DNA from: Haliotis cracherodii
Taxonomy: Eukaryota
Length of the DNA stretch: 64,000 bases
NCBI RefSeq assembly: GCF_022045235.1
Contig: NW_027266279.1
Coordinates: forward strand, 1,860,001 to 1,924,000
Reading direction: 5' to 3'
Positions 29,120 to 52,800 of the stretch are shown here, one piece after another. The translations under genes and the position numbers were made by a program. The notes under the pieces are model-generated. The model saw only the letters and a program-made list of their open reading frames with translations, searched no databases and was not told where the DNA came from. The number at the start of each line of letters is the position of its first letter. Position 1 is the first letter of the stretch.

Positions 29120-31647
29120 TTATGTACACTTATGAATCGCGCATTGTTCCCATCCCTGCTCATAGGCTAGGTAGCACCACAGGTAACCGGAGGGCAGAAT
29201 GTTGCCTCCAGAAGGGTCACGGCAGTAGTTGGCGGCGCCAGCGTAGCCGAGGTTTGGTACACCGTTGGTGATGTCGAAGTAGTTGCGGAAGAAGGCGTGA
29301 TTGTTCGGGGACGTGCTTGACCAGGACTGACATGTTTTTCCGCTTGCGGTTACAGATTTTGTACCACTGTAGACTGCTGTTCTCCCTTGCTTGGTGTAAC
29401 AGTCAGCTGTGAAGAAAATGTCAGTATTAGAAACAGTCCTTTATACAGATATGATTCATACTTTCTTGATGCGGTGTGTCATTGATTGAAGGGGGCATTG
29501 AATTGTTTTTTTCTGTCATATCAGGCTTGTCATGTTGACTGATGGAACAATTAACAGTCTTAGGCGTTTTCAACTTTGGTAAAACCCATTGTACATATAC
29601 ATTGCTGGCAAACGACGATCATGGGATCTTGGCGCGCCCAAGGGAGAAACTCTGCACATCGAAAACATAGTAGTTGGCAAGGAAGTAGGACAAGTTTTCA
29701 TATACTTAGTCTTGTTTGCAAAATGTTCAGAGGAAAAGTGGGTTTCGGGGTGCTTTCCCTAAATCCTTAAATTGAGCGACATGGCAGTAATGTGATATCT
29801 TTCATACAGCAATGTGGCGAGTGAGTATATGAATATGGTTTTACGCCGCTTTTAGCAATATTTCAGTCGTATCTAAGCAGGACACAGCAGACATGTCACC
29901 AGAGATAGGTGATATCTTTCACGAAAAGATTAGACTGTCACACAACAAAGTATGACAAGAAAGAAAAAATATTCATTTCAGTTTATTGTTTTTTCAAGGC
30001 CATATGACCCATATGATATACATGTTTATCATTCAGTTATACTACATTGCACATTTCCGTTCTAATGTTAAATACAACCTACATATATTTTGACACATGA
30101 AATATATTCTGAAGTATTTTACCATTGACTATAGGCATCATATCGTGGGCTTGGTTGTTTGTTAAAACTGTTCCATGAGTGCGTGCATGCGTATACAGAG
30201 GCCATACAATACAAACGTGCTTTTCATCTTCAACATATTTACAGTGCGAGCAGATAGTTTTCATCACCTACATGACATTCACCTTCACGTACGTTTTGAA
30301 CACCAAAGGTGTTATATCCACTTCAGAAATGTTAGCAGCCTTTCTGTAATTTATTACTCTATGTTGGACATACGATTCAAACTTAAGTTCAGATTTTATG
30401 GTTGAATAAAAAATAAGTCATCTTTTATCTGTGAGACGTGAATGCCAGTTTTGTTCAGCACAATCAAGGATTCGTTGTTTCAGAACAAAGGTAAACGTTT
30501 CCTCAGTACCAACTCCCTTGGATACCCAAACATACCCGAAGCCATAACTAAACAGCAACTTTCTGATATGAGATGCCCAATTCAAATATTTCCTTTCACA
30601 AGTATCATATATCATTCGAAAACACTTGTGCGGATGTCAATATGTGGGCAAAGATGAAACACGTAACCAATATTTGATACAAATGACATAATAATTTGTA
30701 TCCAGTGGATATCTGCCACTCTCACCATATGCAACAGCACTTGGCAAGGAATAACTTGTATTTAAAACATTCACAATTTTCTATGTACAATATCTATATT
30801 TTCCTTTTTGGGTGTATCCCCACAGCTCATTACCATTCAACAATATCGGTGCTATTTTTGTGTCAAACGGTTGAAAGGCTTTATTAACAGATATATAGTA
30901 TTTACACACAAACGTTTTGATGGTATATTGTGCTTCACTTGCCTACTCTGCGAGGGTATAACAAGCTCTAGTCCAAATCAGCTTTGGAGTAATCATTCGA
31001 CCAAGATATAGACTAAGATTCGACCAAGAGCTAACAGTCTCAAGTGGTACATTATAATATTCCATCTTTCGTATCTAGAGAGTATACTGACTCCGAGCCG
31101 ACCAGTCCTTGTTTCAGCCTCTAAATGTCGAGCGCCAGACAGGGTAACAACAAGTACTATTTTTTAACGCCTTTTCGTATGACACGGCCGGGGATCGAAC
31201 CCAGGACCTTCCGCTCTCCGGACTACTATTGATCTAATTACCAGCCAATCAAATAGATGTAAATGCATTGTTTGGAAAAAGATGTAATGAACGTTCTTAC
31301 GATTAGCGCTTCTCTCTCTCATTTGTAATTTACGGAAAGCTTTGAAACAATGGTAAACACATATTCTATACAAGGGGCGGTCGGGTAGCCTAGTGGTTAA
31401 AGCGTTCGCTCGTCACACCGAAGCCCGGGGTTCGATTCCCGACATGTACAATGTGTGAAGCCCATTTCTGGTGTCCCCCGCCGTGATATTGCTGGAATAT
31501 TGCTAAAAGCGGCGTAAAACCACACTCACTCACTCACTCACTATACAGACTATATATTAGTCCACAGCATAAAGAGAATCACTTACTATTGCATGCTGCC
31601 AGTGTTGAAAGAACTGCTACGATGGCGAGGAGCAGGAGACGAGCCAT
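29120..31647 (-). CDS. Secreted single-kringle protein K1, 115 aa; exons join(31647..31587, 29406..29120)
   Basis: Exon 1 encodes MARLLLLAIVAVLSTLAACN followed by gtaagt (phase 1). Acceptor ttttcttcacag. Exon 2 encodes TDCYTKQGRTAVYSGTKSVTASGKTCQSWSSTSPNNHAFFRNYFDITNGVPNLGYAGAANYCRDPSGGNILPSGYLWCYLAYEQGWEQCAIHKCT*, with six kringle Cys and the Y.G, T.SG..CQ.W, NYCR, WCY and W..C motifs. AATAAA at 29093-29088. Absent from the ORF track. Confidence 0.9.
30150..31050 (-). mobile_element. Degenerate LINE 3' region (RTE-X-like) in the K1 intron
   Basis: Minus-strand peptides NWASHIRKLLFSYGFGYVW..FVLKQRILDCAEQNW and CSHCKYVEDEKH, typical of the C-terminal part of such ORF2 proteins. Confidence 0.6.
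31374..31540 (+). mobile_element. tRNA(Asp-like)-derived SINE family A, full length
   Basis: Sequence runs ggggcggtcgggtagcctagtggttaaagcgttcgctcgtcac..gggttcgattccc..gctaaaagcggcgtaaaac-(ACTC)n, with flanking ctataca duplication. Confidence 0.88.
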
Positions 31648-31900
31648 GTTGCTGCCTGTACAGTTGAGACCGACTGGTCCTTAAAACGGCGTAGGTACGA
31701 CACACGTCGTGACATACACGGACAACTGTTGACGTGGGTGATGATATTGCAATTTTAGATGAAATTCCCATTAGCCTTTCTGCCATGCGTGACAGATGTG
31801 AGGCCAACGTAATTGTCAAATTCTCATGAAAGAGTCTTTGTCCGAGTAAATAGGGCACTGATGTAGGTTATTGAGTGAACATACTCCAAGTGTATTGTAG
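31648..31900 (-). promoter_or_regulatory. Conserved 5'UTR/proximal promoter block of the kringle genes (paralogous blocks at ~37408-37650, 45454-45690, 53495-53695)
   Basis: About 250 bp of non-coding sequence aligns among all four paralogues (acacgtcgt, ttgacgtgg, attgcaatttt, gacagatgtg.ggccaacgta.ttgtcaaat), while sequence further out does not. Confidence 0.7.
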
Positions 31901-32638: not shown

Positions 32639-32690
<52 letters not shown>

Positions 32691-32875
32691 CACACACACA
32701 CTCACGCACGCACGCACGCACGCGCGCACTCACGCAGAGTAAAGTTACCCCTCAAGTGAGTTTCAACTGATCTGTGATGGCTGTTCAGGGCTGCTGCAGC
32801 TTCATTAGAGCTCGTATTGGAAGGTGTAGATGAAGATGACGTGCCAATGTCAACTCCTGTTTTCACACTGTCGCG

Positions 32876-33037
32876 GGGGAGGTCGGGAAGCCTAGTGGTT
32901 AAAGCGTTCGCTCGTCACGCCGAAGACCCGGGTTCGATTTCCGACATGGGTACAATGTGTGAAGCCCATTTCTGGTCTTCCCCGTCGTGATATTGCTGGC
33001 ATATTGCTAACAGAGGCGTAAAATCATACTCACTCAC
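32876..33037 (+). mobile_element. SINE family A copy with a 13-bp target-site duplication
   Basis: TSD tcacactgtcgcg at 32863-32875 and 33038-33050; empty paralogous site at 25923-25935. Confidence 0.9.
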
Positions 33038-34584
33038 TCACACTGTCGCGTGTTGTCCATGTCTCCGAACTATCCGGTATGGATGTACAGCCGTTGACCA
33101 ATCCACGAGGACGACGTCGTTAATCCACGAGGACGACGTCGTTAGGGCTCCACACTAAATCAGCACCTGCGACAGCGCTGTGTGGTCCAGTGTGTCGGCG
33201 TCACATTTGGGCAGCGCTTCAATGCAGTAAACGTGTGGATTATCAAATAGAAATTTGTTGAAGATATCACTTGAATAGACTTAATCTTGCTTATCTTAAA
33301 TATGCAGAGGGATTTGATTTCAATTAGTGAAATTGACAAACTTTGCTGATGGCTGATCAAACATTATTTGCCATTTCGGCGTCTTTGTACTGCATGGAGT
33401 CAATGGCATACAGACACGCACGTTTCTGTACTTCAAGAATAAGTTACTCTTCATTTATTTGTGATTTTGGCATCGTTATTTCTACAATGAAGACTGTATT
33501 TGTCAAACCATGTGTTTTCTTTTCCCGGAAATGACATATCAATGAAAAGGGGATTTCCCAAAGCGTCATGGCAGCAAGCAGCAAACGTCGCTTTTTTCAC
33601 GATTTAATAAAATTCCTGCTTTCACGCTACTGCTGCCCTGCAGGTTGACTATCTTAAAAAACAACTAGAGGCGATATATTTCTGTATATTTGTGGCTGCA
33701 CCACTAACGCGCTGGTGTCGTGTTGGGAGGCCTTGAGGATTGTTTAAACAGATGTGTACATAAACTTTCCCGCTATCAAAGATGACAGACTCCATCAGCT
33801 TGTGTTAAACCTAGATATCGAAAGCATCAAGGGCTTGGTGGGTGTTAGGGAGGAACCGATGAGCTAAGGGGGTGGGTTTTTGTTTTTTTTATTGGGGGGG
33901 GGGGGGGGGGGGGGGGGGTGTCGCTTCACATACTTTAAGGAGGGGATGGAGGGCTTGAAAAAATGACAGTTTTGCTTCTTCAAATAATTTTGGTATGACG
34001 CGGCCGGGCATCGAACCTACGACCTTCCGCTCTCCGGGCAGACGCTCTATTCATGTTTTGGTTCATGTGTGGAAATGTATGACTAAAGACACATTGAAAT
34101 GAAGTTCTCTCATGGACTAGTATCACTGTGCCAATATGTTTGATTGTTTGTTTGTTGATGTTGTTTACGCCGCACTCAGCAGTATTGAAGCTACATGACG
34201 GCGGTCTGTGAACAATCGAGTGATTGACATCATGAGTATCGATCCACGCAATTGGGATACGATGACATGCATCAATCAAGTCAGCGAGCCTGACCATTCG
34301 ATCCTTTTCGTCGCCTCTTACGCCAAGGATGGGTTGCTGAAAACCAATTCTAACACGGATCTTCACGGTTTTAGGCCATACTGGGCAATATGACAGTTAT
34401 GTCAAAGCACAAATTGAACGACAGAGTGACATTTCTCCCAATTTAGGACTATAAAAGAATATTTTATTCCAGATAAATTCCAGAATAATATTTTCCGCTT
34501 TAGGACGTCCTGAGTAGAATGTGTAAAATTCGTTTGTTCAGCTCCTTTAATAATATGCCAAATGATGTGGAGTTAAGTAACGTC

Positions 34585-34950: not shown

Positions 34951-34952
34951 AA

Positions 34953-34984
<32 letters not shown>

Positions 34985-34986
<2 letters not shown>

Positions 34987-36100: not shown

Positions 36101-36501
36101 TAGCCTCTCGTTGACCAAGAAAATAGTGTCAAAAGGTTGGTTTGTTTGTTTGTTGTTTTACCCCGCACTCAACAATATTCCAGCTATATGACGGCGGTCT
36201 GTAAAATAATCCATTGTGGACCAGACAATCCAGTGATTGATATCATGAGCTTCGATCCACGCAATTGGGATCGATGACATGCATCAACCAAGTCAATCCC
36301 GTTAGTCGCCTCTTACGACAAGCATAGTCGCCTTTTAGCGTCAAAAGGGACAGATTGTTATTATTTTCATTATTCTCTTGTAATTGACCAAGAAAATAGT
36401 ACATCAAGGTAATATTACGTGGTCAGTGCCTCTTAGGGATGGAAAACAAGACTATTTTGTCAATTTAGATTTATTATCAAACAATATTCACTTATGGAGA
36501 C

Positions 36502-37407
36502 TTATGTACACTTATGAATCGCACATAATTCCCATCCCTGCTCATCGGCTAGGTAGCACCACGGATAACCGGAGGGCAGAATGTTGTCTCCAGAAGGGTC
36601 ACGGCAGTAGTTGGCGGCTCCAGCGTAGCCGAGGTTTGGTGCACCGTTGGTGATGTCGAAGTAGTCGCGGAAGTAGGCGTGATTGTTCGGGGCCTTGACG
36701 GACCAGGACTGACATGGTTTTCCGCTTGCGGTTACAGATTTTGTACCACTGTAGACTGCTGTTCCCCCTTGCTTGGTGTAACAGTTAGCTGTGAAGAAAA
36801 TAGCAATATCAACAATAAACACATATACACAAATAATGCTCATGCTTTTTTGACGCGGTTGTCTCATCGAGCGAAAGAGGGTGATTGAATTCGGTTCAAC
36901 GGTTGAACAACTTAGCTATATCTCCTTGCACTTTGTCAGAAGCAATATAAAACCCACGATTAATATCTTAATTTCTTTACTAATCGCACGAAAGAGAGTG
37001 GTACAGTTTGGTATAACGTTTGAAATTTGTGTCAGGAACAACACTTGATTTTCTGCTGTTCTCCCTTGCTTGGTGTTACAGTCAACTTTGAAGAAATTGT
37101 CAGTATCAGAAATATGATATATACAGATTCATACTTTCTTGATGCGGTGTGTCATTCATTGAAGGTAAAACACACAAGTACATTGATGGCAAACGACAAT
37201 CATAGGATCCTAGCGCCCCCAAGGGATGCAACTCTACACACTTTTTGACTTCACAGTCCACTCCCCCCCCCCTCTCTCCCCAACAATGGAAAACAGATAT
37301 TCCTTTTGACTATATATTAGTCCACAGAATTAAGAGAATCACTTACTATTGCATGCTGCCAGTGTTGAAAGAACTGCTAAGATGGCGAGGAGCAGGAGAT
37401 AAGCCAT
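36502..37407 (-). CDS. Secreted single-kringle protein K2, 115 aa; exons join(37407..37347, 36788..36502)
   Basis: Exon 1 encodes MAYLLLLAILAVLSTLAACN followed by gtaagt. Acceptor ttttcttcacag. Exon 2 encodes TNCYTKQGGTAVYSGTKSVTASGKPCQSWSVKAPNNHAYFRDYFDITNGAPNLGYAGAANYCRDPSGDNILPSGYPWCYLADEQGWELCAIHKCT*. AATAAA at 36475-36470. Confidence 0.9.
37053..37165 (-). pseudogene. Truncated duplicate of a K1-type kringle exon start plus its upstream intron, inside the K2 intron
   Basis: Aligns to 29375-29490. The acceptor has changed from cacag to caaag, and only DCNTKQGRTA remains. Confidence 0.75.
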
Positions 37408-38367
37408 GTTGCTGGCTGTACATTTGAGACCGACAGGTCTTTACACCGACGTAGGTACAACCCACGTCGTGACGGGCAGTCAAATGTTGAAGTAGGTGAC
37501 GACATTGCAATTTTAAATGAAATCCCCATCAACCTTTCTGCCATGCGTGACAGATGTGCGGCCAACGTAACTGTCAAATACTTATAAAAAAAATGTCTTT
37601 GTCCGAGTAAATAGGTCTCGCATGTAATCCATTGAGTGTATACTCCATGCATCCATCAAGATATTGCACCAGCTGTAGGGAGTGGCTGTAACGAGATGCT
37701 TGAATGTTTGCAATGAAATTTCGTACGACCCCCATAGATAACCAAAGAATGATTGTCATTGTTGTGAACACATTATACAGTGACATGAACTCCTTGACGG
37801 ATTTCCGTGGATATTAATACTTTTCACTGAACAGAGAACAGTGAACATTACTGGACATTATTGCTACTTTGATAATTGATACACATTATCCTGTACATAA
37901 AAGTGGCAACTGGTGATATTGTTCACATTCCGTCATGAAGTCGGATCATAGGATAAAGCTATCAGGTAGACGTTGTGTGTCGAGATTAAACGGTCGACAG
38001 TTACACATTGCCACTTGAATAACACCTTTCTAAACCTGACAGCAAAATCTCCCAACAAGAAACACATGTATAAGAATCGGAATTCATAGCTCACATGGTA
38101 AAAGTAAAAAGTCAACACTCTGCTTCATTGATGACGCATCCTGTACCAACGCAACATGGCATGTTTTTAATGATATGTGGTGAAGACATATATACCAGGA
38201 ACTATATGGCTCACGGCATAGATAATCACCTAACTGTTGCCTTTATTAAAATGATTTGGACCAACAGTTGGTGACAGTAAAACAAAAAGAGCATTGATTC
38301 CATTGATTGCTTCACATTTTAATGCACAGTCAGTGTGGTTTGGCACATTGAGTATCATAGATATGAA

Positions 38368-38517
38368 GTGAGTGAGTATGGTTTTACGCCGCTTTTAGCA
38401 ATATTCCAGCAATATCACGGCGGGAGACACCAGAAATGGGCTTCACACATTGTACCCACGTCGGGTCTTCGGCGTGACGAGCGAACGCTTTAACCACTAG
38501 GCTACCCGACCGCCCCC
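38368..38517 (-). mobile_element. SINE family A copy
   Basis: Reverse complement of family A, flanked by a catagatat duplication. Confidence 0.85.
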
Positions 38518-38639
38518 ATAGATATTAAGAACATGTACATATTGTATGTCATACTATAACAGAAAATGAACGTATAATATGTCATTAATACTTTAAATAA
38601 GTTGCACATTTCATTAGGTTATGATTATATTTTTAAAAA

Positions 38640-40195
38640 GTATATTTCTTCGGTCATTTCATAAGTTTCTTCAACTCAACATTAGCAAATCATCCACAGC
38701 ATCAAACAACATCCTTCAGTTTCCTGGTTGTTCCGATATGAGTGGATATCTGGTATCATAGTCAATCAGTTTGCGATAGTTGATCGTATCAATCCCTACT
38801 CCACTGTCTGACTGATGGGACATCTTACTTAGAGAGTCAACCAAAATAGGTACTAGTTTTCAGCTCAGGACAATCTTCATGTACATCACTGAACGCTTTC
38901 TATCCTGTCGATGTAAATATCTGATAAATACAGAGACAGCAGGAGCACGACTGCTTATATTGTGATGGTAGCCCATTTGAAGGACGTCCGAAGCGAGCCG
39001 GTCGCTTTGTTGTCGTTTTGCAATCAGTATCCATCCAAAGACCTACATGAAAGGTTCGTAGTTGTTCCCACTGATAAGGCCTCAAATGACATAACCATTA
39101 TATGAAATCATCACTGTATTAATTGTTTAATCAAAGAACTTAATATAAGTATAAGTGTCACATCAAATAAAACTATATATAAGGCCAGTATGCTAACTGA
39201 GGAAGAGAGGGGGCGATCGGGTAGCCTAGTGGTTAAAGCGTTCGCTCGTCACGCCGAAGACCTGGGTTCGATTCCGACATGGGTACAATGTGTGAAGCCC
39301 ATTTCTGGTGTCCCCCGCCGTGATATTGCTGGAATATTGCTAAAAGCGGCGTAAAACCATACTCACTCACTTACTGGGGAAGAAATCTGTCTAAACCATG
39401 CATCAGTACTAACGACTTTTGGCTTCACTCTAAAACTTGAAGACATGTCCATTCCTCGTTTGTACCTGATCCTAAAGCTCCATGAGAATTCGGTAAATTT
39501 AAATAGTTATATGGCTGGGTTCAACGAATGAACCACTAAATCAAATATTAACCAGTAATCCTTAACACAATCAAGGAAGGAATATCCTCATATCCAAAGA
39601 AAGTATTTGAGATTAGTGGAATTAACCCCATATGGATTTGCTTTACCTTTTACAATCTCAGAAAAGAACCAAGTTCAATTCTGTCAAAATATTTGAGTTT
39701 TTGTACACAACTATCCAACGTGACACACGTCAAGTAAAAACTTCATTCCTTGACCTTTGGGGCTTTTTTGGAACACGTAGTGACCATTGACACAGTTACA
39801 TATCTATCTTCAGAGGTTTAGGACAATTTGTCAAAAATGAAAGCAAATGCCATCTGAAGTTTACTGAGAAAACAATATTTCAAATGCCGTACTTTTTCAT
39901 TGATAACATCCATGTACAAATTGGGGCAAGACATTTCGTCAAGACGTAGGCATCCCAATGGGCATTACTTATGTTCCCCTTCTTGCTTATAGTTTACTTC
40001 ATTCATATGAATCGGAATTTCTACTCGGATTTTTTCAGATGCACAATGGACTTGCCTATGCATGTGTTTGTGACGGGTGCCACCGGCGGGGCAGGATACG
40101 CTCAATTTTTCGCGAACACCTGGTATCATCACTATTTGTTAGTTATTCATGAGCACATTCTCATGATATAGTCGGAATCGTATTATGAGTTTGGA
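38640..40195 (+). mobile_element. Degenerate Penelope-like retroelement RT remnant (SINE A inserted at 39208-39370)
   Basis: Frameshifted peptides LHERFVVVPTDKASN, IPRLYLILKLHEN and IDNIHVQIGARHFRQDVGIPMGITYVPLLAYSLLHSYESEF correspond to the PLE RT motifs (P.DK..N; KLHK; Q..GIPMG). Confidence 0.7.
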
Positions 40196-41373
40196 AAGAG
40201 TGTTATACCATTTTATTTTCTCTTTGGCCTGTACAAATAAGTATCGGGAGTGAGGCAGTGAGCTGGGTTTAACGCTGTTTTGAACATTATTGAAGTTATA
40301 TCACGGAGTGTCGGCTCGATGTAAGAAGAAGGCTCGAAGCGCATTTAACACGAGCACGGGTATGGTGCTGACAAACCTAGATTGTCAGGGATTCGAACCT
40401 ATGACCATTGGTTTGTGGCACACCAAATGGGAAGCTTGTGTATTTTCACTGGAATATCGACTACTACGACCATTATCAACCCGGTTAAAGAAGTAACTCT
40501 CTTTATAAGTTACATTTTGTGAGTGAGTTGGGTTTAAAGCCGCCAGTTACATCATGGCGTGAATGTGGAAAGAATGACCAGCTTGACGCACGTCGTTGGC
40601 CTCGAAATGTTACTGAACATAAAGGGAAAATTGACTTTTGGAAAGTTTCATTTTGCATAGACCTAAATATGAAACAGACGAAGCGGGCTCAATGTTTTTT
40701 GTTTTTGTTTTGAATCAAACTGATGTGCATTTCGAACCAAGAGGTTGTCTGTTAAATTCTTGGCATCAAAACCCAAATCACCAACTCACTTCTAGACAGG
40801 AGCGTTCCCGCATAGCTGATACGGATGTGACCCTGCTTGTTTTAAAAGAACGCCCTCCTCCATCACGGCATGACAGCTTGGTGCTGGAGAAAATAGCGTT
40901 ATGTGAATCTCTACCAAAATGTCTGGTCTTTCTGGGCAACACGTTCCCTAATCACTCCTTCATTTACACATTGCTTTGCTCATAGTGATGTGAGCTCGTC
41001 GGTACTCTGACACAGAGTGTTTGTTCGAAAGGAATCCGCCCTACCTTTTCGCCGTGCCAGATTGATGCTGGAGAAACTCCAACAATAACGTAGACTAGCA
41101 AAAATAATTTGGCTCAGGCTCAAATCGAAAACATTTCGTATGTCCTAAAAATGTTACTGTTCGGCTCTACCCCGCCCCGAATATAGCAACAAATAAACAA
41201 AACAAAAAGAAAACAAAAAGAAACACAAATTAACACCAAATATGATACAGTCCATAATTAAGAAGATGGAAAACAATACCATTTTTTTCAATCAGAATTT
41301 ATTATTGAAACAAGATTCACGATTCAAATCTTGTGTTGATATTCAAGATCCACTTATGTACACTTATGGACAC

Positions 41374-44300
41374 TTATGGGCACTTATGGGCCGTGCATGT
41401 GTCCCACCCTTCACCATCGGCAGTGTAGCACCACAACGATCCCATTGGAGGGTTGGAGTCTGAAGATGGGTCACGGCAGTAGTTTTCAGGATAGCCGAGG
41501 TTTGGTGCACCGTTGGTGATGTCGAAGTTCTGGCTGAGAAAACCGTGATTGTTCGGGGTCTTGGCGGACCAGGACTGACATGTTTTTCCGCTACTGGTTT
41601 CAGATTTTGTACCACTGTAGACTGCTGTTCCATCGTGCTTGGTGTAACAGTCAGCTGTGAAGAAAATGTCAGTATCAACAATAAACACACATACATAAAT
41701 TATCCTCACGCTATTTGGACACGGTTGTCTCATCGAACGAAATAGGGTGATTGAATTCGTTTTAACGGCTGAACAACTTAGCTAAATCACAGTGTGTCGG
41801 CTAATGTGGGGTGAGATGCAAAATTTATGCGGGTCTCAGACATTTGCAACTTTGGTAAAACGAGGATCATAATTAGGTTGAATATTGAATTCGTACCACG
41901 GTCATAGGATCCTGGCACGCCTAGCGGGCGGCAACTCTACGCTTCGAAGTGGTGCGCCTTCGACAACTTGTGGCACCCGTTAAATTAAATCATGATATAA
42001 ACATGGCATTCGGCATGTACACTGGACTAGTTCACTTCTTAATGCACTGTCTTGATTGCAATATAATTAAGAACAAAATTTAATTTCGAGGAGCTTTCTT
42101 TAAATCCTTCCAAAATAACGATTTCACGCTTTTCGTTGTTGTTCGGCGTCAGGCACCAAGGAAACATTTACTTTTTAATGCAAATTGTATGAGTGTCGGG
42201 CGCTTCCTGTGGGGCAAGGCATCCTTCCCTTTAAGCAAACACCTGTGTTATCACTTTAAGCGAACACCTGTGTTATCACTGGTTTTCGTGAACCATTCGT
42301 ATATATTTCACCCTTATTTTGCCTTTTCCGCGTAATGGAATCTGTTTCGGCGGATAACCGAGACTAGTTAGACCCAGCATTCGTCACCCACAATGAGAGA
42401 GATTTGAGTTACGTCGTTTCCATGCGGTTTTCCAGCTGTATCACGGCGGGGGATACCAGAAATGTCACCAAGGATTTATGTCACTGAAAGATGATGTTTT
42501 CTCGCTGCAACGGTTTTAAAACTACGTCTGTGATAATCTAGTTATTTTACTGTCCTTCGTCGACAGGTTTTATTTTCAGTTTTGTGTATTATTAATATAT
42601 AACTTGATTCAGTCACGATATGGCTGAAATATTGCCGATGTGATTATAAACTCACTCACTCACTTACTCTCACTGCAACGTATGTAATAAGATAGAAAAT
42701 ATAGACAGTTTTATATTTACAATATTGTTGCCATGACCACATGTTATGCTGCCTTCTTCCAATGTTTCAGGTCTCTGGGCTCTCTGTTTTTAGAAATTTA
42801 GATTTGTACAATTTCAAATTTTCATTAAAATACCTCAAATTAACTGAACCAGATAATTTTGAGATTGAAAGAAGGGAAATGAAACTAGGAGTGATGGAAT
42901 TACCGCTTCATCTATCAAAATTTAACATAAAAATAGAAGCACATGACAAGACAGATAGTCCAAGTCCTCATTTACGTGTGTGAATGCAAACATGAGTGAG
43001 TGAGTTGGGTTTAAACACCGCTTTTAACAGTATTCCAGTTATATCTGCCCCAACAGTAAACAGGCTTCCGCTTTACAAGATCTTTTGCGCGTTAACTGTT
43101 CATCTGCGTGAACGTCAGTTTCATGCGTGTTATGTAGTTTTAATGTATGATTGTCCTATCTATACTCGGCAACAAAAGTTCCGGTTGCATACAAAAATAA
43201 ACTTTCTGGTGTTCAAATCGGATACGAAACTATGAAAACGTGTAGCACAAACGCAACCTCAGCAGAAAAGCATGATCTGATGGCAAAAAGTGTCTTCCAT
43301 GCAGCAACCATGCACTTGATGATGTAAACCAGGGTATGAAAGCGCGCGTGTTGTGGGGATTCGGTGTCTGCTTGTCATGACAACTGCAACACGGAAAAAC
43401 ATCACATTTCAATCATTATTTGAAGTTTGGAGATGCCACGCCTATCTGAAAATGACCGCTTGCGAGCAATTGGTATGCTCCATTCAAGAACGTCGCAGCG
43501 TGAAGTTGGTCGGCGATTGAACGTGCACAGAAACACCATTTGACGTTATGGCAGCAAACAAACAGTCAGGGACCGACCAAGGAGCGGCAGGTCCCCCGTC
43601 ATTCAAGATCGTTGGATTCGAATCACCCATCTGCGAAATCGGTTTCAGCCTGCAACAATCACTGCGAGAACCATCCCTGGTCTTTGTCGAATATCGCCGT
43701 CTATCCCCCGTTCACATGCGCCTCTATACATATGTGTCAATATGGGCACACGTGTGTCGAAACACATATGTCAGTATACTTTTCATGTGAACGCATTTAC
43801 TCATGTGTGTATATTTACACCAGGAGCAAATTTGCATCATGCCTGGAGCAAGTGCAAATGTGAACGTAAATATGCACTGTGTGTATATGTTGCAATGTGA
43901 ATTATGTTAACATGAGAGCATGATCTTATTTATAGCTGTTCTTTTGCCAACACCAAACAAATTGTCAACAGTTGTCAACTTTTATGGGTATATAGTTGGG
44001 CGGACAGTGTTTTCTTTTGGTTTCAAGGATTCAAAACTTTGTGTACAAATTAAATCAAACACATGTTTCTTCACGCGAAAATTTTCGGTGAAGTAACTCT
44101 CTTCTCATTCAACTTAGGTTGGAAAACAAGTTAAACAACCTGTTTTGTGTTGAAAGTTATTTGGTTGAATATGTGTGCCTCACACAAGTTGAAATTCACG
44201 TGAACGCATAGTAAATTTACATGTACACACGTATGTATAGTTACACATGTGGAAAATTCTGGTTTGCAAGTGACCAATGGCAATTTGAACGGACAGCGTT

Positions 44301-45453
44301 AGAGTGACGAGGTCATCCAGCCTATCGTTGTGACGTTTTTGAATCAACATGGACCTGGCATGATGTTTCAGCATGAAAACGCCCGAGCCTATGTAGCTTG
44401 GATTGTTCAACAAGCACGTGGACAGAACAACTTGAATGTGATTCCATGGCCTAATCGCTCTCCAATTCTTTTTTACCAATTGAACACATGTGGGATGAAA
44501 TGGACCGACGTCGCCGACGTTTACCACGTGCTCCGACAACATTATAGGAACTGAGAGACAGGCTGGGGAGATATGGGATGCCATATACAAAACTGTAAGA
44601 CGTTTGATCCGTTTAATGCGCAGGAGATTGCATGCATCCAAGTGAGAAGGGTGGACACACACGCAACTGTGTCAATGGACAATTCTGTTCTTGCATCTCT
44701 TATCATAACGTCATTTCCGTGCTCGACATGTGTCATTAATTGTGTAAACTTGTTTTATTGGTCCATTGTCTGTTTGAAAATATGAATTCGTTCTGATGTG
44801 TGCGTCTACTTTGATCCGGTTTCAGATGTGTGCGTTTACTTTGATCCGGTTCTTGTTTTATATCGTGTCACAGTGTTTTTTTCTTGCTGAGTATAGTTAC
44901 TTATATAGAAGTTTTATCCTAACTGTACTGATTTTCAGGCGTGGGGATCCGGAGGCGGCGAGATTTGGGTTCAGCATTTTTTTGGTAATGTTTAGGAGCG
45001 GGTTGGTTTTTTTTCAACCAAAACAGGTGCCCGTTTATTATTTGTTTACCTGTTGGATGCAACAGAGACAGGGATAAACTTCAGTGCTAATTTGAAATTC
45101 GAAGAGCTTTTCGTAAATACATTCACGGGAATAAGATACCATTTAAAACATTTTGCAATGATACAGGTGAATCAAGTCAAAGGCTTTAGCGTCAAAGAAG
45201 CCACCTTTAAGATTTTAAAGAAACGTTTACCAAACATGTTTAACCAACAAGCACTGTTATTGTACGTGAAATGAATTTATTTATGTAGCTGCTGTCACCC
45301 ACACGACGGAGCATGATTTGACAAATTCCTCAAACGTCAGTTAGAACTGAACTTGTAAACTTGTAGTCCATAGAATTGAGAGCATTACTTACTATTGCAC
45401 GATGCCAGTGTGGACAGAATTGCCAAGGTCGCGAGGAGCAGGAGACGAGCCAT
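41374..45453 (-). CDS. Secreted single-kringle protein K3, 113 aa; exons join(45453..45393, 41654..41374)
   Basis: Exon 1 encodes MARLLLLATLAILSTLASCN followed by gtaagt. Acceptor ttttcttcacag. Exon 2 encodes TDCYTKHDGTAVYSGTKSETSSGKTCQSWSAKTPNNHGFLSQNFDITNGAPNLGYPENYCRDPSSDSNPPMGSLWCYTADGEGWDTCTAHKCP*. AATAAA at 41303-41298. Confidence 0.9.
43163..44893 (+). mobile_element. Defective Tc1/mariner transposon in the K3 intron, with a nested ~0.55-kb insertion at ~43705-44270
   Basis: Termini TA|TACTCGGCAA and TTGCTGAGTA|TA. N-terminal HTH peptide MPRLSENDRLRAIGML..QREVGRRLNVHRNTI..DRPRSGR from ~43433; catalytic region FQHENARAY..NVIPWPNRSP..PIEHMWDEM at ~44330-44520. Confidence 0.85.
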
Positions 45454-48400
45454 GTTGCTGTGCGGCGGAGACCGACTGGTTGTTGCTACGGAGAAGGTAC
45501 TACACACGTCGTGGTAGACAGTCAAATGTTGACGTGGATGGCGCGATTGCAATTTTAAATGAAATCCATATTGACCTTTCTGCCATGCGTGACAGATGTG
45601 AGGCCAACGTAATTGTCAAATTCTCCTGAAAGAGTCTTTGTTAGAGTAAATAGGGATTAGACGTAATCCATTTAGAATATTCTCCATGCATCTTTAGACA
45701 ATGGGGCAGCTGTGACGAGGTGTTTGAGTGATTGGAATAAAATTACGTATGAACTGCAGAGCTACAGATAAGCAGCGTATTGGCCCCCCTCCCCCCAAAT
45801 AAAAATAATAATAATCAAAACCCAATTACTCTCAATTAACTTGCGTGCAGAAACGCATGCATTAAATGAAAAACTCAAATGTATAAAAACAGCACGACGT
45901 CGCGTAAATACTCATTGAAGTTTTTTTCAGCACGTGTACAACGGAGCTAATTTCCGAATCACAATTACGAGCTAATTTACTTTCCGTGTCAAGCCTATAT
46001 ATTTAGAACAGTTATATACATGTAAAGGCGGGATATTTTGCCCAAGTTCCTTACAACAGTTACCAAAATATCCGGCCAATTTACTAATTTTAGAATAGGG
46101 TTTGGGGTTCACGGCACTGGTCTCAGGGGTCCCATAGCAACAGCTCTTAGCCAATAGCCTGGGACTATGGGGTCACATGACAGGGGCCAGTGCCCCCGTG
46201 TGACCTCAAAACTTTTTAACCGCCTCTTTCTGCCTGCACTGCCTGGACACCAACATCGCCAGCTAGCCCTGTTCATTTTGTTTTAGGTAAGAGCACCAGT
46301 TTCTCTGTACGGCATCTATAGGTCTATTGTAGGCAATTATTGTATGGTCCGGTGCATAGTTATAACATTTACAGGATTAGGAATCATGTGCTGCATTTAT
46401 TTTCATAAAGTCAAGCAAAATTCAAAACAAGTGTTTGGCCATTGTCCAAGTAATTCTTGCTGTGCCAAACTGGCAAACATCGCTCATCTGTGACTGTCCA
46501 AAGGTGCACCCAATGGCAATAATGAATGACATTTATTTGTTGCACTATTTTCTCGTTTGAAAATAGCTGTAGTAAAATACCTTTTGTGTTTGGAAGTAAT
46601 TTTGCTAATTGGATCGGCCAGTCAAAATTGAAACTAGCTCTTTGCTAAATTCAAAGTTCCATTTATTCCAAATTCTTTCGTCTGATAAATGCACTTGTTG
46701 CTGACAACAACAGAACTCTGTTGCAAGTTTATTTTAAAGTAACAAGTGGCTGACCCCTCACTGACAGCTCTTGACCTGTGCGCTGGGAGCACACATTATC
46801 TTCGGCTATCCTCGGCATTCTCCGGCTCTCTTCCGGTGGCATCACAAAATGGCCGCACCGGATGTAAACAAGGCATGGCTCCGTCGTCTGCTTCATGTTT
46901 ACCTTAACACAGTTTGGCCTACCATACATTAATGTCATCCTATCCTAATGTCTGCGAAGTAATGGTAACACATACCAGTTCACATATATGGCATAATATT
47001 CAGGCAATTTAAGATTAGTGTACATTCCTGCAGATGATAATTTTCTTGTCCTCTTGGCGTCTGGCGTTACGCAATCCCATATGATGACAGCTGGCTTAGC
47101 AGTAACCAACTTCTAAATATGGAAATACCCTGTTTATTAAATACCAATCCTGTCCTATTAAATATGTAATATTTCTACATTGTCGGATTGGTGTTATAAA
47201 GTATATTTCACGGCGTTTTCCCACTTGATGTGATAGTGAAGTCACCTTGTATTCAATAATAATATAATGTATTATATTATATGGCCAACAATTTGCCTGC
47301 AATCTGAGAAATATGTATTATGTAATATCCATTTACTACATTCATTTTTAATACATTTGCTTTAATTCGGCATTCATTCTGGGTAGCCTCACGTGGCTTA
47401 CCTACTGGGTGTATTGTCATACTGTTGGAGCTAGCCCCATATGGATTGGTATGATCATCCAACAGGCAGTCATACCCCACTCCTCTTAGCCACAATTCTA
47501 GTACAGGCCAGGTGTCCTTTCGTGGTTATTAGGCTTACGTGTTTAAACCGGTTATTTATACATGCATATCATATTCCAAATGCGCTGGGATAAATATTCC
47601 CTCACTTTGGGTTTAAATCCTATATCCTATATGGTAGAAAGGATGTGATGATTATATTGGGGGATTATTGGTTAATGTCATTTCCGTAAACAATCATTGT
47701 CGTTGTGTATTTATTTATGCACATATGCCTTTTTGTATCAATAATGCGTTTGCATAGTCCTTAACATTGTCATTTTCTCTTATAAGTATTATCATCACAT
47801 CCTGAATATCGGTTGGATTATTGTTGATTCTTTTAAATATATTATATAAGCTCTTTCTGCCTGCACTGCCTGGACACCAACATCGCCAGCTGGATCAGCT
47901 CATTTTGTTTTAGGTGTCTTCCAGTCTGTGCAGTCAGGATTTGCACCCTGTAACTTTCTTACTTTATAATACACAATTATTACTGTCTTTTTGTGTTGTG
48001 TTATCTTTGACTGGAGTATTTCGCGCAGTAAGCACACTTGCCCATCCCTTTTCCGTGAGACGAAATCGTTACACAACTGTGGTGATTTCACAGGTCTTAC
48101 ATACATCTAAAAACATTATTTCATTTTTTTAGTCTTAAAATGTTCACCAACTTTGGGAAAAACCCAATAGAGTGATGAATAGATGAGTGAAAATAATATT
48201 GGTTTACCAATGAAAAATATAATAACCCAATTAAAATAGAAACCTTAGAGTAAAAACTCAATTGCTCTAAAAGTTATCTGGAGCTCTGATGAACGCAATA
48301 GATAACCAGAGAATGATTGGCATTGTTGTCAACACATTATATATTAACATTCCCCGTTTGAAATATATTTTGTGGATAGTAATATTTTGTTATTGAACAC

Positions 48401-49884: not shown

Positions 49885-52800
49885 TTACACTTGTGGACAC
49901 TTTCGAACACTGCAAAGCCCCCATCCTGGCGCATCGGCAGTGTAGCACCACAGATACCCGGATGGCTGGAGGGCGCCTCCAGAAGGGTCCCGACAGTAGT
50001 TGCCGGCGCCATGGGAGCCGAGGCCTGGTGTACCGTTGGTGATGTCGAAGCTCGCGCCGTCATAGCCATGATTGTTCGGGGACGTGCTTGACCAGGACTG
50101 ACATGTTTGTCCGCTACTGGTTTCAGATTTTGTACCACTGTAGACTGCTGTTCCATCTTGCTTGGTGTAACAGTCAGCTGTGAAGAAAATGTCAGTAACA
50201 ATATTAAACACATAAATAATATGCATACTAGTTTGGTTCAATGTTTGACTATTTTCATTTGTGTGTGTTTGTTTGTTGTTTAACGCCGCACTCAGCAATC
50301 TTATAGCTATATGACGGCGGTCTGTAAATAATCGAGTCCAGACCAGACAATCAAGTGATTGACATCATGAGCATCGATCCACGCAATTTCATAGGGCGAA
50401 AAGGCAAAATAGTGATGACATATATATGAATGAATCACTTAAGATCAGTGATGACACCAAGTGTTCACAAAAGTCAAAGCATGTCAGTGTCAATAGTGAG
50501 AGTTTGTTTGTTGTCTGACACCGCACTCATCAATACTCCCGCAATACGACGGCGGTCTGTAAACAATCGATCCTGACCAGACAATCCAGTGATCAGTATC
50601 ATGAGCCATGGTCCAAGCCTGTTCCCCCGACCCACTACAGTAGTGTCAGTGAGTAATGAGGTGTGAAGACCCGTTAAGGTCATAATATTGGATAGCATCG
50701 GGCACCATATTGACATGCGACGTGTCATATTTGACAAATTCCTCTGCTTGTCTTCTATATAATGTTTGGTATGATTTCCGACATTTGATGGTGAATAAAG
50801 GCCATAAAAACACGAGCATGGCATCATAAGCATCGTTCCACGCAATTGAGATACGATGACATGCCAAGTCAACCAAGTCAACCAAGTCAGCGAGGCTGAC
50901 CACCCGATGATACCGCACGACCCCGTTAGTCGCCTCTCACGACAAGCACAGTCGACTCTTACGACAAGCACAGTCACCTCTCACGGCAAGCACAGTCGCC
51001 TCTCTCGACAAGCACAGTCACCTCTCACGACAAGCACAGTCGACTCTTACGACAAGCACAGTCGCCTCTAACGACAAGCACAGTCGCCTCCTACGACAAG
51101 CACAGTCGCCTCCTACGACAAGCACAGTCACCTCTCAAGACAAGCACAGTCGCCTCTCACGACAAGCACAGTCGCCTCTCAAGACAAGCACAGTCGCCTC
51201 TCACGACAAGCATTCGCGGATCTTCACGGGTCTTCGTTTGTGTCAGGTTAAGGGAACAACAAATTGATTTTCGACAGGGGATTGGGTGTGGTGGTTGTGG
51301 TTGGTTTGAGATCAGCATTTTCTTCTTAATGCTTGGGAGGTCAATTATTTTTATCCAAGAAATAGGTGCTCAATTAATATTTAAATAAATAATAACAGCG
51401 AGTTGTATTCTGTGGACAGTTGAATATACACTTTTATACAGGATCGTCTGTGACCGGGGGTAAAACCCTCCCACATTTCGGCCTCCATGTGCAGCGCCAT
51501 CTTTTTTAAGTTGGTTGGTCAAATACATTATCTGTCTGTCGAAGTTGTGACAGACAGACAGATAATGTATTTGAGTCTCACCTCGTTATTATATAATACA
51601 TGGTGAATACACTCCTTAAAAATTTATTAGTATAAAAGCATATAGAGTAACGAGCCACTCCCGAGAGACTATTTAACATGGGTTTGTTTGTTTGTTGTTT
51701 AACGCCGCACTCAGCGATATTCCAGCTATATGAAGGCGGTCTGTAAAATAATCGAGTCTAGGCCAGACAATCCAGTGATTGACATCATGAGCATCGATCC
51801 ACGCAACTGGGATCGATGACATGTATCAACCACGTCAGCGAGCCTAACCACCCGATCCCTTTAGTCGCCTCTTACGACAAGCATAGTCGCCTTTTACGGC
51901 AAGTTTGGGTTGCTGAAGACCTATCCTACCCCGGAATCTTCACGGGTCCTTTAACATTGGTAAAAACATGTATACATTTTCACACATGTTACACCTGATA
52001 GTATTGATTGTACCAGGCTATTCACAAAAGACAATAATCTATAGTACTACGTGGTGTAGAGCATCCGATCTGGTTGTTAAAATATTATTGCAGGTCTTGA
52101 CAGTTGTAAAAATCAATTCTGGGCGGGACAGTATAAAACCTACTTTCTGTAAATCACTAAAACTATCAAAATCAGAACAAATTTAACGACATTTGGATAT
52201 AAGACAAAATCTAAGATCTTCATAGTGTGGACAATATAATGTAACATGCCTTTTATCTTCTATTTCATCCGTAAAAAACGGGCAGATTCTCTCTGCAAGA
52301 GGTGTATTGGGGTAGCGTCCTGTCTCAACTCTCAGCGGTGCTGCACCACTTCTAAACCTTGACAGGGCGCTACGTAGTTCTAGGGAGGCTTTTGTGTACA
52401 CATTCTTCAATACCGTAATTATCCTTCCATGAATCGACCCCTGAAGATCTGATGGTTACATTCAGCAACCCATGCTTGCTGTAAAAGGCGACTATGCTTG
52501 TACTCAGCAATATTCCAGCTATATGAAGGCGGTCTGTAAATAATCGAATCTGGACCAGACAATCCAGTGATTAATATCATGAGCATCGATCCACGCAATT
52601 GGGATCGATGACATGCATCAACCAAGTCAGCGAGTTAGTCGCCTAAGTTAGTACGGCAAGCATGGGTTGTTGAAGACCGATTCTACCCCGGATCTTCACG
52701 TCTCACCAATGCGGGGCATATGTAGATAAACATCAGCAAAACATAGGCTTGATTGTTTATAAAGAAGAAATCCAGGATAACCCACCCCACCGCCATCACC

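What the first reader, a model, noticed from the sequence alone, without database searches (positions are those of the whole stretch)
29120..50177. Constant framework with four hypervariable loops, and loss of the lysine-binding motif
Seen: the framework is almost invariant (CYTK..TAVYSGTKS.T.SG..CQSWS...PNNH, FDITNG, NYCRDPS, WCY.A...GW..C...KC). Variation concentrates in four segments: after NNH (AFFRNY/AYFRDY/GFLSQN/GYDGAS), before NYC (VPNLGYAGAA/APNLGYAGAA/APNLGYPE/TPGLGSHGAG), after RDPS (GGNILPSGYL/GDNILPSGYP/SDSNPPMGSL/GGALQPSGYL) and after WCY (LAYEQGWEQ/LADEQGWEL/TADGEGWDT/TADAPGWGL). My hand alignment of K1 and K2 exon 2 gives 19 substitutions in 287 nt, about 14-15 of them non-synonymous (13 amino-acid changes). 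That is near the neutral ratio overall despite the fixed framework. Established: in plasminogen kringles the segment after NYCRNP carries the Asp-x-Asp anionic centre of the lysine-binding site, next to the WCY and W aromatics. Here it is replaced by a longer variable loop. Inference: a diversifying ligand-binding surface on a disulfide scaffold, like a small natural binder repertoire.
Basis: partly seen in the sequence, partly recalled or inferred. Interest (0 to 1): 0.75.

Follow-up and report, generated by a model that had tools for sequence, protein, structure and literature searches.

The report
Abalone single-kringle secreted protein gene cluster
Four neighbouring abalone genes each encode a small secreted protein made of one kringle domain whose surface loops differ between copies, but much of that contrast comes from relaxed constraint and patchwork gene history, and proof of selection for diversity is lacking.

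Summary
The sequence observation holds. Four two-exon genes on the minus strand each encode a signal peptide plus one kringle (113-117 aa). They match NCBI Haliotis models; K4 is identical to an H. cracherodii protein. They belong to at least 27 close kringle copies in this genome, and most of the others sit in multi-kringle genes with threonine-rich linkers on another contig. The canonical lysine-binding charges are absent, the aromatic groove residues are kept, and two loops are longer than in plasminogen. The four segments hold 27 of the 40 variable columns, and 13 lie elsewhere. Evidence for diversifying selection is weak. Loop dN/dS is 0.32 in 23 independent paralogues and 0.5-0.7 in the window clade. 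Site-model signals (p 0.003-0.04) vanish for the 27-copy set when the two halves get separate trees. They persist only in the N-terminal half of a 9-copy subset (columns 19, 29, 38, 40). Among K1-K4 the loops also carry 3.7 times more synonymous change than the framework, and K2/K3 share an 87% identical tract ending mid-exon. Part of the "constant framework" is therefore mosaic history or gene conversion. Function is inferred: non-lysine extracellular binders. The scan had already noted this cluster and its patchwork.

The parts
29120..29406 (-). K1 exon 2, coding part: 2 nt completing the split codon, Asp, a 92-residue kringle, Thr and the stop (29120-29122)
   Evidence: acceptor ttttcttcacag|CT; Pfam Kringle E 1.7e-13; 97% identical to P0001, H. 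rufescens, 115 aa.
31587..31647 (-). K1 exon 1, coding part (61 nt, MARLLLLAIVAVLSTLAACN, phase-1 donor GTAAGT)
   Evidence: agrees with the N-terminus of P0001.
36502..36788 (-). K2 exon 2, coding part (kringle plus stop)
   Evidence: Pfam E 3.5e-15; a 132-nt contig of run X2 with 0 differences at 36633-36764, depth 389.
37347..37407 (-). K2 exon 1, coding part (MAYLLLLAILAVLSTLAACN)
41374..41654 (-). K3 exon 2, coding part (90-residue kringle, 2-codon deletion in loop 2, stop)
   Evidence: Pfam E 3.6e-14; orthologue P0006 in H. rufescens, 113 aa; run X2 contigs with 0 differences over 41282-41630, depths 453-1103; AATAAA 71 nt after the stop.
45393..45453 (-). K3 exon 1, coding part (MARLLLLATLAILSTLASCN)
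49885..50177 (-). K4 exon 2, coding part (kringle, then Pro-Gln-Val and the stop)
   Evidence: Pfam E 2.7e-12. By eye, the kringle part reads letter for letter as in P0003, H. cracherodii, 117 aa.
53434..53494 (-).
   Evidence: matches the N-terminus of P0003.
31648..31888 (-). Conserved 5'UTR/promoter block upstream of the K1 ATG. Counterparts lie at 37408-37647, 45454-45655 and 53495-53696.
   Evidence: Self-BLAST identities of 75-86%; alignment A1 with long invariant runs. Apart from about 25 nt at the start codon, the block is not found at the C14 relatives.
29279..29296 (-). Loop 1 of K1 (AFFRNY, residues 36-41). By the plasminogen alignment it sits at about kringle positions 34-40, where lysine-binding kringles have a basic residue.
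   Evidence: Columns 38 and 40 are the only loop sites with surviving site-model support.
29231..29260 (-). Loop 2 of K1 (VPNLGYAGAA, residues 48-57). It lies inside an insertion of about 8 residues relative to vertebrate kringles.
   Evidence: This is the lowest-confidence part of the AF2 model (10-residue block means of pLDDT 62-71).
29180..29209 (-). Loop 3 of K1 (GGNILPSGYL, residues 65-74). It replaces the Asp-x-Asp segment and is 3-5 residues longer.
29144..29170 (-). Loop 4 of K1 (LAYEQGWEQ, residues 78-86). It contains the retained Trp (position 72 in kringle numbering). The Arg71 position is absent.
   Evidence: Column 84 (Gln82) has posterior 0.97 in the 27-copy M8 fit, but this is not robust.

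Best explanation
The stretch holds a tandem cluster of four independent two-exon genes of an abalone (Haliotis). Each has its own conserved promoter/5'UTR block, a 61-nt signal-peptide exon and a terminal exon that encodes exactly one kringle followed by a stop. The products are secreted proteins of 113-117 aa.

The genes are an offshoot of a larger abalone kringle family of at least 27 close copies. Most other members are exons of multi-kringle genes with threonine-rich, mucin-like linkers on another contig. The nearest relatives of K1-K4 are the last two kringles of such genes.

The domain keeps the kringle core and the aromatic groove residues (Trp62, Tyr64, Trp72 in kringle numbering). It lacks the acidic and basic centres that bind lysine, and two loops beside the groove are enlarged. 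The inference is that these are extracellular binding modules for a ligand other than C-terminal lysine, such as a glycan, a mucin or a matrix or surface protein, and that the paralogues differ in specificity through the groove loops.

The pattern of constant framework and variable loops has three sources. (1) Shown: ordinary purifying selection on the core with 2-fold weaker constraint on the loops. (2) Shown as a pattern, with the mechanism inferred: mosaic history or gene conversion keeps parts of the exon, and in one pair the adjoining intron, similar between copies, while the 3' half carries older or faster divergence at synonymous sites too. (3) Suggestive only: possibly positive selection at a handful of sites, mostly in the N-terminal half.
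For: Gene models.
- Canonical acceptor and donor sites, stops directly after the sixth cysteine (K1-K3 within 1 residue, K4 within 3), and poly(A) signals 11-75 nt downstream.
- The predicted lengths equal those of NCBI Haliotis proteins P0001, P0006 and P0003.
- Exon-limited contigs of depth 389-4945 in runs X1 and X2, against 5-8 over intron and intergenic DNA, and none in run X15.

Family.
- 53 kringle matches in the own genome, 27 of them close.
- C14 copies carry tails that are 42-67% Thr.
- Tree.
- Close single-kringle relatives among proteins of 52-165 aa come only from Haliotis: 7 of the 10 hits at E <= 1e-10 among 556 candidates.

Fold and binding site.
- AF2 model with pLDDT 80; Foldseek TM-scores 0.6-0.73 to apo(a) and plasminogen kringles.
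- HMM alignment to plasminogen.

Selection.
- M0 omega is 0.24 for 27 copies.
- Loops against framework: 0.32 against 0.17 in 23 independent copies, and 0.68 against 0.47 in K1-K4.

Mosaic history.
- The synonymous rate in the loops of K1-K4 is 3.7 times that of the framework (LRT 10.75, p = 0.001). It is 1.09 times in the independent copies (p = 0.5).
- Synonymous differences at codons whose residue is the same in both copies: 21-55% in loops against 6-13% in framework for the five pairs other than K1-K2, which has 7% against 4%.
- K2-K3 identity is 87% over the last 120 nt of the intron and the 5' half of the exon, 64% in the 3' half, and the 3' flank cannot be aligned.
- K3 and K4 branch lengths are 2-7 times longer in the 3' half.
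- A K1=K4 / K2=K3 patch at columns 28-30.
Against: - No ligand, tissue or phenotype is known. The binding function is inferred from the domain type and from the relatives.
- The runs laid are only guessed to be RNA, and no splice joint was among the joints shown.
- The synonymous excess in loops is significant by the likelihood model and by identical-residue codons. On strict 4-fold sites it is only a trend (p = 0.07-0.5).
- The loop mask was defined from amino-acid variation, which can bias codon-path counts.
- Some site-model tests do favour omega > 1. For 27 copies: M2a against M1a p = 0.005, M8 against M8a p = 0.003. For 9 copies: M8 against M7 p = 0.01. For the N-terminal half of the 9-copy set: p = 0.003-0.02.
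- Contigs of another species (run X3) differ from K2 and K3 by 22 non-synonymous and 7 synonymous changes among the differences listed, a ratio near 1. Positive selection on part of the surface is therefore not excluded.
- My codon models fix the tree and rescale the branch lengths, use NEB rather than BEB posteriors, and the full tree is long (19.7 substitutions per codon).
Confidence: 0.7

Rival explanations
1. One reading: the four loops form one ligand-binding face under diversifying (positive) selection, so the cluster is a small natural binder repertoire on a kringle scaffold.
For: - Loops L1, L3 and L4 map by alignment to the segments that line the canonical kringle groove.
- Loop composition is rich in Gly, Ala, Ser and Tyr.
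- With a shared synonymous rate, loop omega is 1.40 in K1-K4. Pairwise loop omega is 0.97-1.23 for the pairs that include K4.
- Site models: p = 0.003-0.04, and the N-terminal half of the 9-copy set keeps its signal.
- All 3 residue differences between K1 and its H. rufescens orthologue lie in L1 or L2.
- Differences between species in K2 and K3 run 22 non-synonymous to 7 synonymous.
Against: - Loop omega is 0.32 in the 23 independent copies and 0.52-0.68 when the synonymous rate is free.
- The 27-copy signal vanishes with separate trees for the two halves (M8 against M7 p = 0.44 and 0.93).
- L2-L4 show no significant signal in the 9-copy set (p = 0.2-0.24).
- The best sites, columns 19 and 29, lie outside the four loops.
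- Elevated synonymous change in the loops is not explained by selection on the protein.
- Recombination is known to inflate these tests (recalled from the literature, not from a call).
Confidence: 0.2
2. A mutational cause: the loop-coding segments mutate faster than the rest of the exon (targeted hypervariability, as has been proposed for cone-snail toxin genes), which raises both synonymous and non-synonymous change.
For: Synonymous and non-synonymous differences are both concentrated in the loops of K1-K4. No donor paralogue for the K3 or K4 loops was found among the 27 copies; the best loop identities are <= 0.63.
Against: - The same segments show no synonymous excess in the 23 other paralogues (ratio 1.09, p = 0.5).
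- The K2-K3 similarity tract includes 120 nt of intron and ends in mid-exon, which fits a recombination or conversion boundary rather than loop-by-loop hypermutation.
- Introns and 3' flanks are even more diverged than the loops.
- The cone-snail parallel is recalled, not taken from a call.
Confidence: 0.05
3. Redundant duplicates drifting towards loss: the high dN/dS reflects relaxed constraint on copies that are no longer needed.
For: Overall pairwise omega is 0.49-0.81 among K1-K4. About 45% of sites fit omega = 1 under M1a.
Against: - All four reading frames, all six cysteines, the splice sites and the promoter blocks are intact.
- K1-, K3- and K4-type copies are retained in other Haliotis species.
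- There are deep exon-limited contigs for K2 and K3.
- Core sites have omega of about 0.03-0.1.
Confidence: 0.05

Closest known systems
Kringles of plasminogen, apolipoprotein(a) and HGF (Pfam PF00051). The NCBI names of the Haliotis orthologues are 'plasminogen-like', 'apolipoprotein(a)-like' and 'HGF-like'.
   Same: Six-cysteine kringle. The profile matches plasminogen at E 1.4e-57 summed over five kringles. Foldseek TM-scores are 0.6-0.73 to apo(a) KIV and plasminogen K4. The NYCR-P and WCY motifs and Trp62/Tyr64/Trp72 are conserved.
   Different: One kringle only, with no PAN or protease domain. There is an insertion of about 8 residues before NYC and one of 3-5 residues after RDPSGG. The Asp55 position reads Ser. 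The Asp57 position reads Gly (Asp in K2 and K3). The Arg71 position is absent. The basic residue at position 34/35 is replaced by Ala or Gly (the numbering and the roles of these residues are recalled).
Multi-kringle genes with Thr-rich linkers in the same genome (C14:1.508-1.586 Mb)
   Same: The same kringle subtype, 50-76% identical, with the same two insertions and the RDPSGG motif. Where found, the signal peptide is similar (MTRLLLL...).
   Different: Several kringles appear to belong to one gene (inferred from spacing, acceptor-like sequence and stops), separated by linkers of 100-424 residues that are 42-67% Thr. The promoter block differs. There is no synonymous excess in the loops.
Engineered kringle-domain binders (Lee et al. 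2010 PNAS; I saw only passages in the review PMC6389260)
   Same: The idea of a rigid disulfide core carrying diverse loops. The review states that 45 loop residues of plasminogen kringle 2 were randomised without much loss of stability and gave binders of nanomolar to micromolar affinity.
   Different: That is an artificial library with selected targets. Here there are four natural genes with unknown ligands and no robust evidence of selection for diversity.
Flatworm adhesion protein Tmed-krg1 (PMC9229212; abstract and passages seen)
   Same: An invertebrate kringle protein proposed to bind another secreted protein in a mucus or adhesive setting.
   Different: A 1357-aa membrane protein with six kringles that the authors describe as lysine-binding. 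The abalone proteins are small, secreted and lack the lysine-binding charges.

Membership tests
Kringle domain (PF00051) | Profile match above Pfam's gathering score | tested here: met
   47.3-56.5 bits against a cut-off of 34.3 for all 4 of 4 exons.
Kringle domain (PF00051) | Six conserved cysteines with kringle spacing, and the kringle fold | tested here: met
   All six Cys are invariant in 27 of 27 copies. AF2 model pLDDT 80.2; Foldseek gives 11 kringle chains at E <= 0.001 with TM up to 0.73. Disulfide connectivity itself was not tested.
Lysine-binding kringles (plasminogen K1/K4/K5 and apo(a) KIV-10 type) | Anionic centre Asp55 / Asp57 after NYCRNP | tested here: not met
   The aligned residues are Ser and Gly (Gly/Asp in K2, Ser/Asp in K3), against DND, DAD and DGD in plasminogen K1, K4 and K5 (the role of these residues is recalled).
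Lysine-binding kringles (plasminogen K1/K4/K5 and apo(a) KIV-10 type) | Cationic centre (Arg/Lys at about position 35, and Arg71) | tested here: not met
   Ala or Gly at the aligned position 34/35. The Arg71 column is a gap in K1-K4.
Lysine-binding kringles (plasminogen K1/K4/K5 and apo(a) KIV-10 type) | Aromatic trough Trp62, Tyr/Phe64, Trp72 | tested here: met
   The Trp of the WC motif is invariant in 27 of 27 copies, with Tyr or Phe after the Cys. The Trp before the fifth Cys is present in 25 of 27, Phe in the other 2.
Lysine-binding kringles (plasminogen K1/K4/K5 and apo(a) KIV-10 type) | Binding to lysine or epsilon-aminocaproic acid | not testable with these tools
   Needs recombinant protein.
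Plasminogen / apolipoprotein(a) / HGF proteins (the names given by annotation) | Several kringles with a PAN domain and/or a serine-protease domain in one polypeptide | tested here: not met
   A stop follows 0-3 residues after the sixth Cys, and each gene has its own signal-peptide exon. The orthologous NCBI models are 113-117 aa.
Paralogue families under diversifying selection (binder repertoires) | dN/dS > 1 at the variable surface, robust to recombination | tested here: inconclusive
   Loop omega is 0.32-0.68. Whole-alignment site tests give p = 0.003-0.04. These are lost for 27 copies with split trees and kept only in the N-terminal half of the 9 copies.
Paralogue families under diversifying selection (binder repertoires) | Variable residues form one contiguous face | not testable with these tools
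   Model coordinates are not returned. Only a sequence mapping to the canonical groove segments was possible.

The most novel reading that the evidence does not exclude
Abalone have evolved a natural counterpart of the engineered kringle binder. It would be a lineage-specific set of free single-kringle proteins, with mucin-tethered relatives, whose remodelled, charge-free aromatic groove and enlarged loops are diversified by selection for different targets, for example microbes, gametes or mucus glycans. Short gene-conversion tracts would keep the scaffold uniform between copies.
Probability: 0.2. Interest if true: 0.65.

Novelty: new variant of a known kind. Interest (0 to 1): 0.35.

Why it matters
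If these proteins are specific binders, they would be a compact natural scaffold for recognition in a mollusc, an animal group without antibodies. They would also be relevant to abalone mucus, immunity or fertilisation biology, where fast-evolving secreted proteins are already a model system. For the scan, the main lesson is methodological. A pattern of conserved framework and variable loops with dN/dS near 1 among tandem paralogues can arise from relaxed constraint plus mosaic gene history, and the synonymous sites and flanking introns reveal this. The architecture of a signal peptide plus one kringle, and its link to multi-kringle Thr-rich genes, does not appear in the papers searched. Searches for kringle with abalone, Haliotis, gastropod plus mucus, mollusc plus secreted, and positive selection plus tandem plus invertebrate, and for plasminogen with Haliotis, found no paper whose title or opened passages deal with such proteins.

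Tried and rejected
One gene with four kringles. Rejected: each kringle exon ends in a stop and has its own ATG exon and promoter block.

Import of the K3 and K4 loops from another paralogue. No donor was found among the 27 copies; the best loop identity is <= 0.63.

Shared promoter with the C14 relatives. Only about 25 nt at the start codon match.

Site models on the whole alignment. The first M2a start collapsed to M1a. A second start found the better optimum.

Split-tree reanalysis. It removed the 27-copy signal.

4-fold-site test of the synonymous excess. It shows a trend only.

Protein atlas. It returned only generic kringle clusters.

Reads. No splice joint was among the 15 joints shown (203 more were not shown), and the runs are only guessed to be RNA. 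Splicing therefore rests on sequence signals and on the NCBI models.

Earlier findings by place returned nothing. By words they returned titles only.

Mapping variable sites on the 3D model was not possible, because coordinates are not returned. No supplementary files were consulted. None of the papers used bears on the claims through its supplements as far as I could see.

Full report
**What is there.**
The window is G000:C16:1860001-1924000 of a 1.18-Gb genome. Six-frame scanning finds four kringle-like open frames on the minus strand. All four match Pfam Kringle at E 1.7e-13, 3.5e-15, 3.6e-14 and 2.7e-12, well above the gathering score.

Each kringle frame is preceded by the same canonical acceptor (ttttcttcacag|CT) and ends in a stop 1-3 residues after the sixth cysteine. 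Upstream of each, by 0.56, 2.2, 3.3 or 3.7 kb, lies a conserved block of about 300 nt. This block ends in a 61-nt coding exon (MARLLLL...AAC-N/G) with a GTAAGT donor in phase 1.

The predicted lengths of 115, 115, 113 and 117 aa equal those of NCBI models from Haliotis. K1 is 97% identical to P0001 of H. rufescens. K3 pairs with P0006 of H. rufescens. By eye, the K4 kringle and signal peptide read letter for letter as in P0003 of H. cracherodii.

Contigs of two same-species runs (X1, X2) lie on the K2 and K3 exons at depths of 389-4945, with 0 differences in the listed pieces. Introns and intergenic DNA have depth 5-8 in X1, and a third run (X15) has nothing on these exons. One X2 contig ends 92 nt after the K3 stop, 15-20 nt beyond an AATAAA. 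The runs are only guessed to be RNA and no splice joint was among those shown. This is consistent with sample-specific expression but is not proof of it.

**The family.**
The own-genome search gives 53 kringle matches at E <= 0.001 (75 candidates scored). Of these, 27 are close (E <= 9e-19): 4 here, 21 on C14:1.508-1.586 Mb and 2 on C20.

On C14 most kringle frames run on into tails that are 42-67% Thr (TTTAAA- or TTTTTP-type repeats of 100-424 residues). Only a few end at once in a stop, and only three signal-peptide exons were found there by my pattern. I read these as multi-kringle, mucin-like genes. That reading is inferred, and I did not build full models.

In a codon tree K1-K4 form a clade (support 96) next to the last two kringles of such genes. 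Among database proteins of 52-165 aa, the close relatives are 7 Haliotis proteins (four species). The next hits are generic kringle fragments at 32-38% identity (10 hits at E <= 1e-10 of 556 candidates).

**The binding site.**
A profile of 25 copies matches plasminogen, HGF, prothrombin, ROR and apo(a) kringles. The AF2 model (pLDDT 80.2, pTM 0.71) matches solved kringles with TM-scores of 0.6-0.73.

In the printed alignments the abalone type has about 8 extra residues before NYC and 3-5 after RDPSGG. Where plasminogen K1, K4 and K5 have D-x-D, the abalone consensus has S-G-G (S-G-D in K2, S-S-D in K3). The column aligned to Arg71 is absent in K1-K4, and the position aligned to the basic residue 34/35 is Ala or Gly. 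The Trp of WC, the Tyr after it and the Trp before the fifth Cys are kept. The numbering and the roles of these residues are recalled from the kringle literature.

So the canonical lysine site is absent. Whether it was lost cannot be said, and many kringles lack it. The least confident part of the model covers loop 1 and the inserted loop 2 (10-residue block means of pLDDT 62-71).

**Is the variation confined to four loops?**
Among K1-K4, 40 of 92 columns vary: 27 of the 35 loop columns and 13 of the 57 others. Clustering along the chain is significant but modest (p = 0.0026).

Between species the spread is wider. K3 against P0006 differs at 7 residues, by eye 3 in the N-terminal part and 4 in loops. 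Contigs of another species (X3) differ from K2 and K3 at 20 codons with a residue change, 8 of them before loop 1. All 3 differences between K1 and P0001 are in loops 1-2 (by eye).

**Selection.**
Pairwise Nei-Gojobori omega among K1-K4 is 0.49-0.81 overall, 0.40-1.23 in loops and 0.28-0.78 in the framework.

I wrote a Goldman-Yang codon likelihood. Its M0 value reproduces IQ-TREE's (-5176.965).

- For 27 copies, M0 omega is 0.24. M2a beats M1a (LRT 10.8, p = 0.005, omega 4.0 for 2.2% of sites). M8 beats M7 (p = 0.016) and M8a (p = 0.003). Two sites have posterior above 0.95: column 19, outside the loops, and column 84, in loop 4. Mean omega is 0.50 in loops and 0.29 in framework.
- For the 9 closest copies, M0 omega is 0.37, M2a p = 0.04 and M8 against M7 p = 0.01. 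No site is above 0.95.
- Because the copies look mosaic, I refitted the two halves with their own trees. For 27 copies nothing remains (M8 against M7 p = 0.44 and 0.93).
- For 9 copies the N-terminal half keeps a signal (M8 against M7 p = 0.010, M8 against M8a p = 0.003, M2a p = 0.024; columns 29 and 38 at 0.98-0.99, columns 19 and 40 at about 0.9). The half that holds loops 2-4 does not (p = 0.24 and 0.20).
- In 23 paralogues that played no part in defining the loops, omega is 0.32 in loops and 0.17 in framework.
- The listed differences in the other-species contigs are 22 non-synonymous and 7 synonymous, a ratio near 1. The lists are incomplete (29 of 35) and orthology is assumed.

Taken together, the loops are about twice as free as the core, a few sites may be positively selected, and the case for a diversifying surface over all four loops is not made.

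**Synonymous sites and mosaicism.**
With separate synonymous scales, the loops of K1-K4 evolve 3.7 times faster at synonymous sites than the framework (LRT 10.75, p = 0.001). Omega then falls from 1.40 to 0.68 in the loops. The same split gives 1.54 times in the 9-copy set (p = 0.04) and 1.09 times in the 23 others (p = 0.5).

Codons with the same residue in both copies differ in 21-55% of cases in loops against 6-13% in framework for the five pairs other than K1-K2, which has 7% against 4%. On strict 4-fold sites the direction is the same but the result is not significant.

Framework identity among K1-K4 is 87-95%. Loop identity of K3 and K4 to the others is 57-66%, no better than to the C14 copies.

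K2 and K3 are 87% identical over the last 120 nt of the intron and the 5' half of the exon, 64% over the 3' half, and unalignable beyond it. K1 and K2 are 93.5% identical in the exon, 86% in the first 110 nt after the stop and 70% in the last 80 nt of the intron.

Parsimony-informative sites favour K1K2|K3K4 (19). A K1K4|K2K3 patch lies at columns 28-30 (4 sites in all). K3 and K4 branches are 2-7 times longer in the 3' half.

A protein tree places H. rubra and H. asinina proteins inside the K1/K2-type and K3/K4-type groups, so the types are older than those species splits, although support values are modest.

I read this as old duplicates whose 5' exon parts have been kept alike by short conversion or recombination tracts. 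This agrees with the scan's separate note on patchwork among these paralogues. A faster mutation rate confined to the loops is a less likely alternative.

**Function.**
Nothing in the searched literature deals with these proteins. Passages in a review describe kringle 2 of plasminogen tolerating randomisation of 45 loop residues and yielding binders (PMC6389260). A flatworm study proposes a six-kringle membrane protein as a partner of an adhesive protein (PMC9229212).

Three observations bear on function: the mucin-linked relatives, the retained aromatic groove, and loops that are rich in Gly, Ala, Ser and Tyr. On these grounds my best guess is a set of secreted binding modules for a non-lysine ligand in mucus, matrix or on cell surfaces. 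This step is inference.

**Verdict.**
The pattern is the ordinary one for a small disulfide domain, sharpened by mosaic history, and positive selection is suggestive at best. I rate it a new variant of a known kind, of moderate to low interest.

Noticed in passing
G000:C14:1508905-1585750 (loci L031-L039): A dense array of 21 kringle exons. Many run on into Thr-rich (42-67% Thr) repeat tails of 100-424 residues. They look like multi-kringle, mucin-like genes and are the nearest relatives of the window's genes.
   Followed up: partly
window 31648-31888, 37408-37647, 45454-45655, 53495-53696 (minus strand): A promoter/5'UTR block of about 250 nt is conserved at 75-86% between the four genes, with long invariant runs, while the introns cannot be aligned. 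It is a candidate shared regulatory element and is absent from the C14 relatives.
   Followed up: partly
window 8166-11907: A strongly G-rich tandem repeat array (GC skew 0.73-0.79) of about 3.7 kb. Self-matches are offset by multiples of about 84 bp.
   Followed up: no
window 14544-15207, 16006-17465, 27013-28120: Three further tandem arrays, with self-match offsets of about 84 bp, about 40 bp and about 11-66 bp.
   Followed up: no
window 21230-21388, 31374-31537, 32876-33041, 38367-38516, 39210-39374, 57404-57565, 59913-60074, 61276-61441: A short interspersed element of about 160 bp in at least 8 copies, 80-98% alike. It has very high summed contig depth in the runs (1.5e5-5.6e5), so it is abundant genome-wide and/or transcribed. 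A second repeat of about 240 bp recurs at 17559, 22918, 23707, 28713, 36139, 49251, 51682 and 57665.
   Followed up: no
window 36500-36630 (K2 exon), run X1: One contig on the K2 exon carries a mix of K1-like and K2-like letters. It could be a chimeric assembly of two near-identical transcripts, or a K2 allele bearing a conversion tract.
   Followed up: partly
exon 1 of all four genes (e.g. window 31587-31647): A cysteine is conserved at the end of the signal-peptide exon (..LAAC|N) and in the C14 signal exons (..SCQ). It is either the -1 residue of the cleavage site or a seventh, unpaired cysteine in the mature protein. Not resolved.
   Followed up: no
window 58522-58688: A run of 167 N (gap or masked).
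   Followed up: no
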